The position numbers were made by a program, and so were the translations under genes. Under the pieces are notes generated by a model that saw nothing but the letters and a program-made list of their open reading frames with translations, was not told where the DNA came from and made no database searches. Below, one piece after another: positions 19,350-26,449 of a stretch of DNA of 64,000 nucleotides (position 1 is the stretch's first letter; the number at the start of each line of letters is the position of its first letter). Source of the DNA: Magallana gigas. Its lineage: Eukaryota. The stretch is from NCBI RefSeq assembly GCF_963853765.1, contig NC_088854.1, forward strand, positions 9,920,001 to 9,984,000. Reading direction: 5' to 3'.

Positions 19350-19720
19350 GAGTTTTGATTAATACCAGAACGCTCTTCGGATTGCGTCGTTTATTTTACA
19401 CCATCGGAAAGGTAAAAGACCGAGACTCGAAACGCATGTTGTTTTGTCAATTTGTGACCTGCGAAATTGTCTATTGAATTGTAAAATTTAGGTTGTGTAT
19501 TAAAAAATACCTGACCAGGAGACGGGAGGAGAACGACGAAAAAGATACGATATGGGACGTACGTATCACATATTTGTTGCACGGAGGCACTTTTTAAATG
19601 TTTGTAACTGTACCTAATGTGCTTAGAGGAAATTCGGAACAAGTCTCAGCGTAGCATAAGGAGTTGCATTATATGCTGAAGTTTGATTTGATTCATTTGA
19701 TTCATTGCGTATCGTCACTA
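19350..19720. promoter_or_regulatory. CpG-rich putative TSFM promoter / first-exon region
   Basis: Local CpG enrichment directly upstream of a CpG-poor gene body. It contains the candidate start ATG GGA C|GTACGT. Confidence 0.45.
19552..19558 (+). CDS. TSFM: TSFM exon 1 (tentative; ATG GGA C)
   Basis: Only nearby ATG I found with a phase-1 donor (GTACGT). It yields [21 protein letters not shown], which resembles a mitochondrial presequence. Confidence 0.5.
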
Positions 19721-22700
19721 CAAATCATTGAAGTGTATGATGGCCTAATTGATGGTCATTAAATTGATAAAACGAATATACTAGCTGTAATGATTGTTAT
19801 GTACAGTAACGACTCAAATTATGCAACTCCAAATCACTATCAGCACTGCCCCCTAATCAGGTTGGTCACTGTCCATCGATTGAAGTTTTGACACCCACTG
19901 TTTAGTCTGTAGATACTCCTCTTTCTTGAAGAAATAAATATTTCATCAGCTCCAATTGTGTTTTTTCTCCACTTGTATGCAAGAAAACAAATTAGAGAAG
20001 AAAGAGGTCATGTTGCATGTTGTTTTGTGAATAAAGTTAATCTTTTGGTGAAAAAAAAAAACATGTTAATAATTTTCAGCTTCCTTAATGTTTGAAGAAA
20101 AAAAATGAATTGCAAGAGTGCAAAATTTATGCATTTATTTTTTTTTTAAAAGAAGGTTTATGAAGTACACATGCCAGAGTAAGCTAGTGTACTTGCCCTG
20201 TTGTTTAACATCATTATAATGAGTATTTCTTAAGCGTAATACAAAATGAACTACAATTACTTTCTGTTTGGTTATTTATATCCAGTTCACCTTACTAATT
20301 TGATATTGTCAATATAAGATATCAACAATGTCTATACAATATCGTTTTTACATCATGTGCATTCATTTGTAATCATTTTTATGGTAACGCTGTGACATCA
20401 TGATGTTGACAATATTGGTAAGACTTGGTGATGTTTTTGGAAGAGTCAATAATTCTCATTAATCTTTTATTTATAGGAATATACAAAGACAATATTACTT
20501 AACATTACTAATACTTAACATGTCTCTAAAACAAGTTTAAAGGGAATATTGCAGTAAATGCACTACAGTAATATCAGAACCATGATGTTATGAATGGTTA
20601 ATTAATTTATATAACTCTTTATATTATTTTCCAAATCATTTATTTTCTGATATACTTTAAATATTTGATATATTTTTAGGGTTTTTATTCTCAACTGTAA
20701 ACTTGGTTTGGAAAACTTTCCCTAGACATTACTGTGCTGCTCAGGCTGCTAAAAGTAACCTTAGCCAACTACGAAAGAAAACGGGTATACCACTGAAGAA
20801 TTGCAGAGCTGCACTTGAGAAATTTGACAACAACCTAGAGGAGGTTCCTTTTAACAATATTAATTCTTTGAAATAATTTTATTTTGCTTTTGTCATTTAT
20901 ACATGCTATTTGTATCGTGAAAACAAAGACATCTATTGATTTTGTGTATTTTAAATATTTTAAGAAAATTAATTTCCATAACTTTCACTGGAAAACTTCA
21001 TGGTTAAGATTTAAATGACAACATGAACTTGAAGTAATGTCTCTAGTATTACATAAGAATTAGGAATTTTGAAAGTAGATACATTTATTTTTTTCGCAAT
21101 ATTTGTACAGGCAGAAAAATGGTTGATAGAACAAGCACAGAAAGAAGGTTGGGCCAAAGCAGACAAGTTACAGTCCCGCCCGATGTCCCAGGGGTTGGTG
21201 GGGGTTTTGCAGTCCAGAGCAGGAGCCACCATGGTTGAGGTATCTAATCAAAGCTTCAGGTTTTTGTAAGATATTTTTTTCAGGCTTACTCATTATTATG
21301 CCCCAGCCATGACTGTTTCAGTGCCTAAAGTGTGACCACTTTGGACCCTTGTTTAGGCTTGTGCTTATAGATAATGAGATATTTTTGTTATTGTAGAGTC
21401 CTTTTTGTTTTTAATTTAGTCCTATTATCTAATCATTAGAAAAAACTCGAAAAACCTAGTATGCTTTATGCTGTACATATTTTTTGAATACAAATGCACT
21501 ACTATTATGCCAAAATAGTTCGAAGTTGATTGATATAAAGACATATTGAATGGAAGCAGTTTGATAACCATTGATATTTTACTCAGTTTAGACAACCCTG
21601 TAATCTGATCGATGAATCTTGTTTTATTGGACTGATTTAGGTGAACTGTGAGACAGACTTTGTGGCCAGGAATGAGAAGTTCCAGGAATTGGTGTACCGC
21701 CTCACCACTGCCTGTCACGACAACCTACAGCAGGATACAAATAAGGTTCAAAATCAGAGGGACTTCCTTCCTTTATTTTGATTAGAACACTACTGCTCTT
21801 GTTTATGAGTTATTGTTGTAAGCATTTGTTAACCAACACTTTCAGGATGCTTTGTGTTTTTAGTTAGTGTTTTGATGTAGATTGTCAAGGATTATAGTCT
21901 GTACAGGAAGAAAGAGGATCCAAACTAATAGAGAGCAAATATATATCGAAATTGGAACACAAAGAGAAAAAATATTATGGTTACAAAATTTAAAGGGGGG
22001 AGGAGGAGTTGAGATAAAAAAAAGTTTCATATTTAAAAGATAAACTTCAACTACAGCTTTTTCTTATGTACAAATGCTACAGTTAAATATCGATCATTTG
22101 TGCCATGTCAGTTAGATATCTAATGCCTGACAATAGAAAATTTTCTGTGCTACAGTAAAATTCTTTGCTCTTTAAGCTATTGCTGCCACTTTAAGTATTA
22201 CTGTAACTTCTCTTTTGGGAGATAGAATTATTATAATAAACTTTAAAACTTTGCTAATGTTTAACTCAGCATTGGGTTTTGTTAGTCAGTAGGACAACAT
22301 TCCATTGAATGAAGTTCATGCTCAACTGAAAATGAAGTTCATGCTTATGGAGCTACAGTGAGTATTTTCAAAGATAGTGAACTTTTATAACTTTTCAGAA
22401 ATTCCTACAACATGATGCTGTAAATGACTTGCCCTATGAGGACAAAAAAATGTCTGATGCCGTAGCTTTGGAGGTTGGTACCATTGGTGAAAACATGCGC
22501 CTACGCCGGGCTATATTCCTTCCTAAATTAGAGGGACAGTTTCTGAACTCGTATGTTCATAACTCAGGTGAGAACAAATCATGTACCAACTTTTTGTTAT
22601 GCAAATATATTATTTTTATATTTATTATTTATTATTAGGGCCCCGCAAGGATTTGCGGGTGCCCTATAGTAATCACTCTGTCCGTCCGTCCTTCTGTCCG

Positions 22701-25748: not shown

Positions 25749-25829
25749 CTGATGCAGTGAACATGCTGGATTTATGTAGTGAATTATGCCTATGCATCTG
25801 AGAGTAAGACAAGGTTTATCTTTGTTCAG

Positions 25830-26449
25830 ATTATGATGTAACAAGAACCACAGATGTCTTGTTGACAACCTCAGCACCAAAACAACTTCCGTTTCTCTGG
25901 TCGCACTGGTCCACGGCGAGGAAGGAACAAGTTGGTAGCAGGAGCTTTCATACCTCCTCAGTGCGAGATAAAAACCTTACGCACACTGACAGTAGCGGCA
26001 AAGCAAAAATGGTTGATGTCGGCGACAAAGAAAACTCGGTCAGAACTGCAGTGGCCTGTGCATCTATTTATTTGGGAGAAGAGGCGTTCTATTTAGTCGA
26101 TGCAAACAAAACCAAGAAAGGGGATGTTCTCTCTGTGGCTCAGTTAGCAGGGATAATGGCTGCCAAGAAAACTGGAGAGCTAGTGCCACTATGTCATAAC
26201 ATTGGACTGAGTAAAGTATCAGTGGACCTGACACTGTACAAACACAACTACTCTGTTTATATTGAATGTGAGGCTAAAACTGTAGGAAAGACTGGGGTAG
26301 AGATGGAGGCCATTACTGGTGCCTCTATGGCAGCTATCACAGTATATGATATGTGTAAGGCTGTCAATAGGGAAATGGTGATATCTAACATAAGGTTGCT
26401 TAGTAAGAAAGGGGGGGAAAGTGGAGAGTACCAGTTTGTTCCTGAATAA
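25830..26449 (+). CDS. MOCS1: Cyclic pyranopterin monophosphate synthase (MoaC / MOCS1B domain), terminal exon without its own start codon
   Basis: Full MoaC signature: LTH...AKMVDVG.K, KKGDVL.VAQLAGIMAAKKT.EL.PLCH, TGVEMEA.TG, TVYDMCKAV, KKGG.SG. Acceptor TTTATCTTTGTTCAG ends at 25829. AATAAA at 26445-26450 overlaps the stop. Confidence 0.93.

What the first reader, a model, noticed from the sequence alone, without database searches (positions are those of the whole stretch)
19552..26449. Candidate EF-Ts / MoaC dual-function locus: MoaC as an alternative last exon of TSFM
Seen in sequence: the MoaC frame is closed upstream by stops at 25799-25801 and 25805-25807. Its first in-frame ATG (26009, MVDV) lies downstream of the conserved LTH motif (25976-25984), so it cannot start on its own. 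It begins at a good acceptor (TTTATCTTTGTTCAG|AT, exon start 25830) needing a phase-1 donor. TSFM exon 5 ends in phase 1 (TCA G|GTGAGA) and would give ...YVHNS-D-YDVTRTT... in frame: 574+620 nt, a 397-aa fusion. Tentative TSFM exon 1 is also phase 1. The 900-bp spacer is AT-rich with only four CpGs by my count and no promoter-like island. Each terminal exon has its own AATAAA. Established: human MOCS1B is encoded in a terminal exon, made only as a fusion to MOCS1A, and matured in mitochondria. Inference: here TSFM replaces MOCS1A as carrier, linking mitochondrial translation-factor expression to molybdenum-cofactor synthesis through a splice/polyadenylation choice.
Basis: partly seen in the sequence, partly recalled or inferred. 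Interest (0 to 1): 0.9.

Follow-up and report, generated by a model that had tools for sequence, protein, structure and literature searches.

The report
Oyster EF-Ts gene carries MoaC exon
In this oyster the enzyme MoaC, needed to make the molybdenum cofactor, has no start codon of its own and is made by splicing its single exon onto the gene for the mitochondrial translation factor EF-Ts, which here takes the place of the usual carrier gene MOCS1A.

Summary
The sequence observations are all correct. The core idea, that MoaC is an alternative last exon of TSFM, holds, but the proposed junction is wrong.

- **Real junction:** RNA data join 24711 to 25830, not 22567 to 25830. The donor AAAG|GTCTCT lies inside TSFM's last coding exon, 216 nt before the EF-Ts stop codon.
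- **What the splice removes:** it cuts out the EF-Ts C-terminus, its stop codon, its 3'UTR and the proximal AATAAA.
- **Product:** a 434-aa in-frame EF-Ts(1-228)-linker-MoaC protein.
- **Unspliced RNAs:** these end near 25.6 kb or read through MoaC as "bicistronic" RNAs. Both encode only the 300-aa EF-Ts.
- **Conservation:** the same junction, phase and dual coding occur in Crassostrea/Magallana, Saccostrea and Ostrea. RefSeq models exist there under uninformative names.
- **Other bivalves:** Pinctada and the other bivalves seen keep the canonical MoaA+MoaC MOCS1 gene.
- **Oyster MOCS1A:** it is a separate gene with an intronless coding sequence.
- **Linker:** an R-x-F-x-x-S/T processing-type motif is conserved in all six oysters. 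This suggests MoaC is released in mitochondria, which is inferred and not shown.
- **Literature:** no paper describing this arrangement was found.

Verdict: a real, conserved, carrier-swapped variant of the MOCS1A/B mechanism. RNA support for the junction in this species is thin: one contig and one read.

The parts
19421..19558 (+). TSFM exon 1: 5'UTR, ATG at 19552, 7 coding nt, phase-1 donor GGGAC|gtacgt
   Evidence: Eleven mRNA contigs start at 19421-19485 and splice 19558|20680. The X8 loose end at 20680 matches 19529-19558. There are 18 CpG in 19300-19600.
20680..20843 (+). TSFM exon 2 (presequence end and EF-Ts N-terminal domain)
   Evidence: Joint 20843|21111 in X8, X21 and X22; contigs.
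21111..21239 (+). TSFM exon 3
   Evidence: Joint 21239|21641; contigs.
21641..21745 (+). TSFM exon 4 (carries the TDFV motif)
   Evidence: Joint 21745|22399; PF00889 hit.
22399..22567 (+). TSFM exon 5, phase-1 donor ACTCAG|gtgaga
   Evidence: Joint 22567|24601 in X8, X1 and X22; PF00889 hit.
24601..24711 (+). Exon 6a: the part shared by EF-Ts and the fusion. It ends at the alternative exonic donor AAAG|GTCTCT (phase 1).
   Evidence: Joint listed as 24709->25828 with cut +2, i.e. 24711|25830, GT..AG, in X1 contig record 1 and one X22 read. The donor is conserved in C. virginica and S. cucullata DNA.
24712..24929 (+). Exon 6b: the last 72 codons of the 300-aa EF-Ts and its TGA stop (24927-24929). 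It is removed in the fusion mRNA.
   Evidence: Translation. The 300-aa product differs at 2 residues from Logan protein P0160. It aligns to bovine mitochondrial EF-Ts 1XB2_B over residues 25-293.
24930..25593 (+). EF-Ts 3'UTR with the proximal AATAAA at 25585-25590
   Evidence: Four mRNA contigs end at 25567-25593. Raw-read depth falls after about 25420.
24712..25829 (+). Alternative 1118-nt intron. It holds the EF-Ts C-terminus, stop, 3'UTR and proximal poly(A) signal. It is retained in EF-Ts mRNAs and in read-through RNAs.
   Evidence: joint, and the unspliced X8 contig 24599-26431. Five unspliced read-through contigs reach 26295-26431.
25830..26449 (+). MoaC terminal exon (206 codons plus stop), with a phase-1 acceptor and no usable start codon
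   Evidence: The acceptor and phase are conserved in C. virginica and S. cucullata, and the MoaC exon of Pinctada MOCS1 is also phase 1.
25830..25975 (+). Linker of 49 residues, fast-evolving and rich in Ser/Thr. It contains the conserved R-S-F-H-T-S-S-V-R-D motif at 25940-25969.
   Evidence: The linker is 31-40% identical between genera, against 79-83% for the MoaC domain. R-x-F-x-x-[ST] sits at the same place in all six species. pLDDT is 24-31 in the model.
26009..26416 (+). MoaC catalytic domain (PF01967 match 1-136)
   Evidence: It aligns to E. coli MoaC residues 3-156 (4PYD, 1EKR) at E 6e-42. pLDDT is 85-98.
26445..26450 (+). Distal AATAAA overlapping the MoaC stop codon
   Evidence: Sequence. 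RNA contigs end at 26431-26435 and depth fades after 26420.

Best explanation
TSFM and MoaC form one transcription unit, driven from the TSFM promoter near 19.4 kb.

**Composite last exon.** TSFM's last coding exon can be used in two ways. If the weak exonic donor at 24711 is ignored, the mRNA encodes the normal 300-aa mitochondrial EF-Ts. That mRNA ends at the proximal poly(A) site near 25.6 kb, or runs on unspliced through MoaC, which then cannot be translated because it has no start codon. If the donor is used, the 1118-nt segment 24712-25829 is removed. That segment holds the EF-Ts C-terminus, stop codon, 3'UTR and proximal poly(A) signal. Exon 6a is then joined in frame (G|AT = Asp) to the MoaC exon.

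**Product.** The result is a 434-aa precursor: the EF-Ts presequence and first 228 residues, a 49-residue linker, then a complete MoaC domain.

**Shown:** the exon structure, the junction, its reading frame, its conservation in four oyster genera, and the existence of read-through RNAs.

**Inferred:**
- The precursor is imported into mitochondria through the EF-Ts presequence and/or the linker.
- It is cut at the conserved R-x-F-x-x-S/T site, releasing a MoaC of about 159 aa that works with the separately encoded MOCS1A to make cyclic pyranopterin monophosphate.
- The truncated EF-Ts part is only a carrier.
- Origin: in the oyster lineage MOCS1A became a separate gene with an intronless coding sequence. 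This looks like a retrocopy of the MOCS1A-only mRNA. The orphaned, start-less MOCS1B exon came to be expressed from TSFM through a newly recruited donor.
For: **RNA in this species**
- One search shows the GT..AG joint 24711|25830. X1 contig record 1 joins exon 5, exon 6a and 24 nt of the MoaC exon at depth 6. One X22 read also shows it, from a different study.
- All reads on TSFM and MoaC are on one strand. Depth drops before 25820 and rises on the MoaC exon.
- The X8 contig is spliced at introns 1-5 but unspliced from 24599 to 26431.
- eleven mRNA contigs have identical introns. Their 3' ends lie at 25567-25593, 25691, 25776 or 26295-26431.

**Reading frame**
- the frame is correct and gives 434 aa.
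- the product differs at only 5 residues from C. angulata XP_052720192.1 (434 aa).

**Conservation**
- EF-Ts_N+EF_TS+MoaC models with the same T[KT]|D junction exist in C. angulata, M. gigas, C. virginica, S. cucullata, S. echinata and O. edulis.
- in C. virginica and S. cucullata DNA the EF-Ts frame continues past a conserved A[AC]AG|GTCTC donor, and the phase-1 acceptor is conserved.
- Pinctada, scallops, mussels, clams, unionids and a chiton keep Radical_SAM+Mob_synth_C+MoaC. The Pinctada MoaC exon is also phase 1.
- oyster MOCS1A is 390 aa, ends in GG and has an intronless coding sequence.
- a snail TSFM has the same single last exon with no intron at this position, so the donor is a new recruit.

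**Enzyme and pathway**
- MoaC is single-copy in the genome.
- the MoaC domain is intact.
- MoaE is present, so the cofactor pathway exists in this genome.
- the processing-type motif is conserved in all six linkers.
- in human MOCS1 exon 10, a linker carries an internal import signal and a peptidase site.
Against: - RNA support for the junction in this species is one short contig (24 nt on the MoaC side) and one read.
- About four spliced reads were expected across 25830 in X22 from the depth step, and only one was listed. Other donors or a start site just upstream cannot be ruled out.
- In the assembled contigs the unspliced path dominates at the donor, so the fusion mRNA is probably the minor form.
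- A sister Crassostrea (P0361, starting MDSSL...) and Ostrea (P0156, starting MASVF...) have an ATG inside the exon. That ATG could start a stand-alone precursor of about 200 aa in those species.
- There are no protein data. Import and cleavage rest on a motif and on analogy.
- MOCS1A could not be located in this assembly.
Confidence: 0.75

Rival explanations
1. One reading: exon 5 (donor after 22567) is spliced directly to 25830, skipping all of exon 6 and giving a 397-aa fusion.
For: Both sites are phase 1 and the product is in frame. The exon 5 donor is a good site and is used constitutively.
Against: No such joint was listed in four runs that covered both sites. Every model in six oyster species keeps the exon-6a residues (DKKVVI...T[KT]) before MoaC, including all O. 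edulis isoforms retrieved.
Confidence: 0.04
2. Shared first exon: exon 1 (donor after 19558) is spliced directly to 25830. This would give a 208-aa precursor starting MGH-YDV..., in which the linker acts as an N-terminal mitochondrial presequence, and no EF-Ts sequence would be carried.
For: Exon 1 is phase 1 and the product is in frame. The linker is presequence-like and has a conserved processing-type motif. 19558 lay outside the stretch on which reads were laid, so this joint could not have been seen directly.
Against: None of the 20 loose-end rows shown (of 120) lay at 25830. No such isoform is among the gene models of six species.
Confidence: 0.07
3. MoaC is an independent gene with its own start site in the spacer, or is translated from the read-through RNA at a non-AUG codon. 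On this view the TSFM-MoaC junction is read-through splicing noise that annotation pipelines picked up.
For: - Read-through RNAs are common.
- Junction reads are few.
- In Ostrea and a sister Crassostrea, ATG codons in the exon would allow a stand-alone precursor of about 200 aa.
- Depth rises at about 25820.
Against: - In this genome the frame is closed 23 nt upstream of the acceptor, and the first ATG lies after the conserved LTH strand. It would give a truncated 146-aa protein with no targeting signal.
- The in-frame junction, donor, acceptor and phase are kept in four genera while the linker has diverged to 31-40% identity. This argues for selection on the fusion frame.
- The spacer has 4 CpG against 18 at the TSFM promoter.
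Confidence: 0.12
4. TSFM is nested inside MOCS1, so MOCS1A exons elsewhere splice over it to 25830 as in other animals.
For: This is the canonical animal arrangement, and MOCS1A could not be located in this assembly.
Against: - The 64-kb window holds no MoaA-like coding sequence even at E 10.
- In C. angulata and S. cucullata the MOCS1A coding sequence is a single uninterrupted 1173-nt exon ending in its own stop. It lies on a different record from TSFM-MoaC.
- MOCS1A mRNA contigs end without MoaC.
Confidence: 0.02

Closest known systems
Vertebrate MOCS1 (MOCS1A / MOCS1AB type I-III splice forms; Mayr, Roper and Schwarz, bioRxiv 10.1101/429183)
   Same: - MoaC (MOCS1B) is one terminal exon without its own translated start.
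- Unspliced 'bicistronic' RNAs yield only the upstream protein.
- An alternative splice removes the upstream stop codon and makes a two-domain precursor.
- The first part of the MoaC exon encodes a non-conserved linker. In human that linker carries an import signal and a mitochondrial peptidase site.
- The upstream moiety is C-terminally truncated in the fusion.
   Different: - The upstream gene is TSFM (a translation factor), not the pathway partner MOCS1A.
- The stop is removed by an exonic donor inside the last coding exon, rather than by skipping a small exon 9.
- The removed segment also holds a poly(A) site.
- The linker is about 49 aa instead of 95 aa.
- Nothing has been shown at the protein level.
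Canonical bivalve MOCS1, e.g. Pinctada imbricata FSP39_024741 (P0163, locus L009)
   Same: The MoaC domain is homologous (67% identity). MoaC is a terminal exon with a phase-1 acceptor. The exon begins with a linker that includes an S-F-T/H-H-S-T-like stretch.
   Different: In Pinctada the exon follows the MoaA exons, plus a small ...ILIGG-stop exon, within a 16.9-kb gene. No EF-Ts lies within 10 kb and there is no synteny with the window.
Composite terminal exon, or splice-versus-polyadenylation switches (immunoglobulin mu secreted/membrane forms, calcitonin/CGRP); from general knowledge
   Same: A 5' splice site inside a terminal exon competes with a downstream proximal poly(A) site. The outcome decides which C-terminus is made.
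   Different: Here the two outcomes are two unrelated mitochondrial proteins, not two forms of one protein. Regulation was not studied.
Separate moaA/moaC genes (bacteria; plant CNX2 and CNX3)
   Same: In oysters MoaA is again encoded by its own gene, apart from MoaC.
   Different: Plant CNX3 has its own start codon and N-terminal presequence. The oyster exon in this genome has neither.

Membership tests
MoaC / cyclic pyranopterin monophosphate synthase (PF01967) | Full-length match to the family profile above the curated cut-off | tested here: met
   Profile positions 1-136 of 136, 183.9 bits against a cut-off of 27.
MoaC / cyclic pyranopterin monophosphate synthase (PF01967) | Conserved active-site residues (E. 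coli K51, H77, E112, E114, D128, K131; the list is from my own knowledge of the E. coli enzyme) | tested here: met
   All six align to identical residues in the alignment to 4PYD/1EKR, E 6e-42. The corresponding columns are nearly invariant in alignment A1.
MoaC / cyclic pyranopterin monophosphate synthase (PF01967) | Catalytic activity: conversion of 3',8-cH2GTP to cPMP | not testable with these tools
   Needs an enzyme assay or complementation of an E. coli moaC mutant.
Mitochondrial elongation factor Ts (PF25025 + PF00889) | N-terminal domain plus complete core domain, colinear with a solved mitochondrial EF-Ts | tested here: met
   The unspliced form gives a 300-aa product that aligns to bovine 1XB2_B residues 3-275, E 1e-55. 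The TDFV motif is present. The fusion form keeps only profile positions 1-102 of 204.
MOCS1-type bicistronic/fusion locus | MoaC encoded in a single terminal exon that cannot start translation by itself | tested here: met
   Stops at 25799 and 25805; the first ATG comes after LTH.
MOCS1-type bicistronic/fusion locus | An alternative splice removes the upstream stop codon and fuses the frames | tested here: met
   Joint 24711|25830, in frame. The same junction appears in the models of six species.
MOCS1-type bicistronic/fusion locus | Unspliced transcripts carrying both reading frames exist | tested here: met
   The X8 contig and five Logan contigs run from exon 1 to 26295-26431 without this splice.
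MOCS1-type bicistronic/fusion locus | The upstream reading frame is MOCS1A (radical-SAM GTP 3',8-cyclase) | tested here: not met
   The upstream frame is EF-Ts. No MoaA-like sequence is in the window. Oyster MOCS1A is a separate gene with an intronless coding sequence.
MOCS1-type bicistronic/fusion locus | The linker carries a mitochondrial import signal and a peptidase cleavage site, and MoaC is released in the matrix | tested here: inconclusive
   Only a conserved R-x-F-x-x-[ST] motif and a basic, Ser/Thr-rich, low-pLDDT linker were found. No targeting predictor or experiment was available.
Composite terminal exon with intronic poly(A) site | A proximal poly(A) site inside the segment that the alternative splice removes | tested here: inconclusive
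   AATAAA lies at 25585, four contigs end at 25567-25593 and depth drops there. No non-templated poly(A) tail was seen, because the terminal A run is genomic.

The most novel reading that the evidence does not exclude
The coupling is functional rather than accidental. On this reading, the supply of MoaC in oysters, and so all molybdenum-cofactor synthesis, is set by a regulated splice-versus-polyadenylation decision inside the gene for a mitochondrial translation factor. The released truncated EF-Ts, which keeps the N-terminal domain and the TDFV motif, would itself act on EF-Tu, linking mitochondrial translation to cofactor synthesis.
Probability: 0.1. Interest if true: 0.85.

Novelty: new variant of a known kind. 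Interest (0 to 1): 0.6.

Why it matters
The odd way animals make MOCS1B has been read as a device to coordinate two enzymes of one pathway step. MOCS1B has no start codon of its own, is made only as a fusion, and is then cut free in mitochondria.

Oysters are a natural counter-example. The same start-less exon, with the same phase and the same kind of linker, has been kept for a whole family's history. Its carrier is an unrelated mitochondrial gene, and MOCS1A sits elsewhere as a gene with an intronless coding sequence.

This suggests that what is conserved is the mode of expression and delivery of MoaC, not its linkage to MoaA. The idea can be tested in a tractable animal.

The locus is also a clean example of exon capture after retroposition. 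In addition, several reference annotations name this gene misleadingly ('elongation factor Ts-like', 'uncharacterized protein'), which makes oysters look as if they lack MoaC.

Tried and rejected
**Locating MOCS1A in this genome.** All of these queries gave nothing:
- PF06463
- TIGR02666
- frog MoaA part
- Pinctada MoaA part
- the Magallana-cluster protein P0253
- its coding sequence as DNA
- C. angulata flanking DNA (only dispersed repeats matched)

Two Radical_SAM hits were fetched and are not MOCS1A. I could not tell whether the locus is withheld, missing from the assembly or dropped by the first-look filter. I did not try to fill any N stretch.

**MoaA relics in the window.** None found, even at E 10.

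**Synteny with Pinctada.** None between the window and the Pinctada MOCS1 locus beyond the MoaC domain, and no EF-Ts within 10 kb of Pinctada MOCS1. How the exon reached TSFM is therefore unknown.

**Ancestral intron at the new donor.** Rejected. A snail TSFM has one uninterrupted last exon.

**Structure model of the fusion.** Informative only for the MoaC domain and the linker. The EF-Ts core scored low because the alignment was shallow.

**Unmatched contig end.** The first 288 nt of contig L018 match nothing in the window.

**Literature.** MOCS1B + 'elongation factor Ts', MoaC + EF-Ts + fusion, MOCS1 + TSFM, 'cyclic pyranopterin monophosphate synthase' + oyster, and MOCS1/retrogene/MoaC gave no relevant paper.

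**Earlier notes of this scan.** Nothing relevant.

**Isoform ratios.** Not attempted. Depth was about 2-6 reads, and a SNP-dense stretch at 24799-24951 drops reads.
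Full report
**1. The observation**

- The MoaC frame is closed by TGA at 25799-25801 and TAA at 25805-25807.
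- The exon begins at 25830, behind tttatctttgttcag.
- It needs one base from an upstream exon (phase 1).
- The conserved LTH lies at 25976-25984, before the first in-frame ATG at 26009.
- The stop is at 26447-26449.
- TSFM exon 5 ends in phase 1 at 22567, and exon 1 ends in phase 1 at 19558.
- The 900-nt spacer has 4 CpG and GC 0.289, against 18 CpG in 300 nt at the TSFM 5' end.
- AATAAA stands at 25585 and at 26445.

The MoaC match is full length (PF01967 positions 1-136 of 136, 183.9 bits) and is the only one in the 564-Mb genome. EF-Ts is likewise found only here.

**2. What the RNA shows**

I laid two sets of assembled RNA contigs (X8, X1) and two poly(A) RNA-seq read sets (X21, X22) on 20620-26600.

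The TSFM introns are 19559-20679, 20844-21110, 21240-21640, 21746-22398 and 22568-24600, each GT..AG. Eleven further mRNA contigs from several studies have exactly these introns and start at 19421-19485. The unspliced last exon gives a 300-aa EF-Ts. It differs at 2 residues from a protein seen in 100 public assemblies and is colinear with bovine mitochondrial EF-Ts 1XB2_B.

The only junction into 25830 that was reported comes from 24711. It was listed as 24709->25828 with cut +2, GT..AG. It stands in an X1 contig that joins exon 5, 111 nt of exon 6 and 24 nt of the MoaC exon. That contig stops at a heterozygous site at 25852. One X22 read from another study shows the same junction.

The donor AAAG|GTCTCT lies inside the coding part of exon 6, 216 nt before the EF-Ts stop. 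It is phase 1, so G|AT makes Asp and the frames join. The result is a 1305-nt reading frame encoding 434 aa.

**3. Three RNA classes**

- Four contigs end at 25567-25593, next to AATAAA at 25585.
- Five contigs, and the X8 contig, are spliced at introns 1-5 but run unspliced from 24599 to 26295-26431. They carry the MoaC frame as an untranslatable second cistron.
- The third class is the spliced fusion form.

Raw depth falls between about 25420 and 25819 and rises again at 25820. In X22 it goes from 0.7-1.7 to 5.9. All reads are on one strand. This fits a proximal poly(A) site inside an optional intron.

The segment 24712-25829 thus behaves like the retained or removed part of a composite terminal exon. 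It contains the EF-Ts C-terminus, the stop codon, the 3'UTR and the proximal signal.

**4. Conservation**

A search of 1.84 billion representative proteins with the MoaC exon gave, as its two best hits, proteins that carry EF-Ts domains followed by MoaC.

By name these and their cluster mates are:
- Saccostrea cucullata XP_062617967.1
- S. echinata
- Ostrea edulis XP_048778452.1 and its isoforms
- Crassostrea angulata XP_052720192.1 (434 aa, 5 differences from the window's product)
- Magallana gigas A0A8W8KPA0
- C. virginica XP_022320645

The window is therefore from a Magallana/Crassostrea oyster.

In all six species the junction falls at the same residue (T-K/T | D). The EF-Ts part is 72-81% identical between genera and the MoaC domain 79-83%, but the linker only 31-40%.

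I checked the DNA of C. virginica and S. cucullata.
- The EF-Ts frame continues past a conserved A[AC]AG|GTCTC donor to its own stop.
- The acceptor (ttgttcag|AT, ttgatag|AT) and its phase are the same.
- The optional intron is 850 and 720 nt.

A land-snail TSFM has the same single last exon and no intron at this position. The donor is therefore a recruited exonic site, not an old intron border.

**5. What other bivalves do, and where MoaA went**

The following carry Radical_SAM + Mob_synth_C + MoaC in one protein: Pinctada imbricata, Mizuhopecten, Ylistrum, Mytilus, Mercenaria, Ruditapes, Solemya, unionids, gastropods and a chiton.

In the Pinctada locus the gene spans 16.9 kb. Its exon 8 donor GCAG|GTACGT is phase 1. 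A small exon encodes ...NRPMILIGG-stop. The MoaC terminal exon has a phase-1 acceptor. The phase of the oyster exon is therefore ancestral.

Oyster MOCS1A is a 390-aa protein ending in ...ILIGG. In C. angulata and S. cucullata its coding sequence is one uninterrupted 1173-nt exon, on a different record from TSFM-MoaC. That is what a retrocopy of the MOCS1A-only mRNA would look like. This is an inference, because I looked for no other retroposition hallmarks.

I could not find MOCS1A in this assembly with eight different queries, and this remains unexplained. MoaE is present, so the pathway is not lost.

**6. How it probably works**

*Shown.* MoaC in this genome has no usable start. The first ATG would give a 146-aa protein lacking the first conserved strand and any targeting signal. 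The only documented way to translate the whole domain is the fusion.

The domain is intact. It aligns to E. coli MoaC residues 3-156, with the residues I know as catalytic (K51, H77, E112, E114, D128, K131) unchanged. It folds with pLDDT 85-98.

*Inferred.* The precursor enters mitochondria by the EF-Ts presequence, the linker, or both.

The linker is basic, rich in Ser/Thr and predicted to be unstructured. In all six species it holds R-x-F-x-x-[ST] at the same place, 25940-25969 in the window. By general knowledge this is the pattern of two-step presequence processing (the R-10 type). Cutting there would leave 159-160 aa, the size of bacterial MoaC.

In human MOCS1 the first 95 residues of exon 10 form just such a linker, with an internal import signal and a peptidase site. 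The MOCS1A part of that fusion is inactive (bioRxiv 10.1101/429183).

By analogy, the EF-Ts(1-228) part lacks the last 72 residues of the core domain and is probably only a carrier. It does keep the N-terminal domain and the TDFV motif, so an activity of its own is not excluded.

**7. Rivals and limits**

Junction evidence in this species is thin: one contig and one read. From the depth step I expected about four spliced reads across 25830 in X22. Junctions with fewer than three reads are not listed, and 19558 lay outside the laid stretch. Minor use of 22567 or 19558, or a start site just upstream of 25830, therefore cannot be excluded.

Assembled contigs pass the donor unspliced, so the fusion is likely the minor isoform.

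In Ostrea and in a sister Crassostrea an ATG inside the exon could start a stand-alone precursor of about 200 aa.

Against the view that the fusion is noise stand three points: the strict conservation of frame, donor and acceptor across four genera despite a fast-evolving linker; the closed frame; and the CpG-poor spacer.

Nesting of TSFM in MOCS1 is contradicted by the separate MOCS1A gene with an intronless coding sequence and by the absence of MoaA sequence in the window.

**8. Novelty**

The fusion proteins are already in RefSeq and UniProt, named 'elongation factor Ts-like', 'uncharacterized protein' or, once, 'cyclic pyranopterin monophosphate synthase, mitochondrial-like'. I found no paper that mentions the arrangement.

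It works like MOCS1 but fails the defining feature that the upstream frame is MOCS1A. I therefore class it as a new variant of a known kind: the MOCS1B exon with a swapped carrier.

Noticed in passing
window 22620-24019 (inside TSFM intron 5): A repeat block with RNA depth of 100-900, against about 5 on the exons. It is covered on both strands, has many variants and loose ends, and holds a (GTCC)n tract at 22677-22710. It is a dispersed, expressed repeat family and not part of the TSFM mRNA.
   Followed up: no
whole genome G000; C. angulata locus L010:5001-6173; S. cucullata locus L017:3001-4173: Oyster MOCS1A has an intronless 1173-nt coding sequence (390 aa, ending ...ILIGG), unlike the multi-exon gene of Pinctada. 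It could not be found in this assembly with eight queries, and neither could unique flanking DNA from C. angulata.
   Followed up: partly
window 18434-18880: The M. gigas UniRef model A0A8W8KPA0 (527 aa) extends the fusion N-terminally through the TSFM 5'UTR into this open frame. Eleven mRNA contigs start at 19421-19485 instead, so the extension looks like an over-prediction.
   Followed up: partly
O. edulis, gene of XP_048778452.1 (no DNA fetched): The Ostrea fusion gene model spans 198 kb. It has several isoforms with different 5' ends (353-435 aa), some lacking the EF-Ts presequence. This recalls the exon-1 variants of human MOCS1.
   Followed up: no
window 56833-58050 (+): An intronless 405-aa open frame with a complete Galactosyl_T domain (PF01762, E 2.7e-56) and an N-terminal membrane anchor. 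It is likely a beta-1,3-glycosyltransferase gene.
   Followed up: partly
window 34649-35290 (-): An exon encoding tandem C2H2 zinc fingers.
   Followed up: no
window 30594-31385 (+): A 263-aa open frame with a signal-peptide-like start and Gly/Ser/Gln-rich repeats (QGFSG units). It has no Pfam match.
   Followed up: no
window 50043-50567 (-) and 15784-17352: A reverse-transcriptase fragment (weak RVT_1 match) and neighbouring open frames without family matches. These are probably decayed retroelements.
   Followed up: no
window about 5975-6255: A run of N (assembly gap or masked stretch).
   Followed up: no
window 24799-24951: A cluster of at least nine linked single-base differences between the assembly and the RNA of other individuals, in the EF-Ts C-terminal coding part and early 3'UTR. 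A divergent haplotype lowers read mapping there.
   Followed up: no
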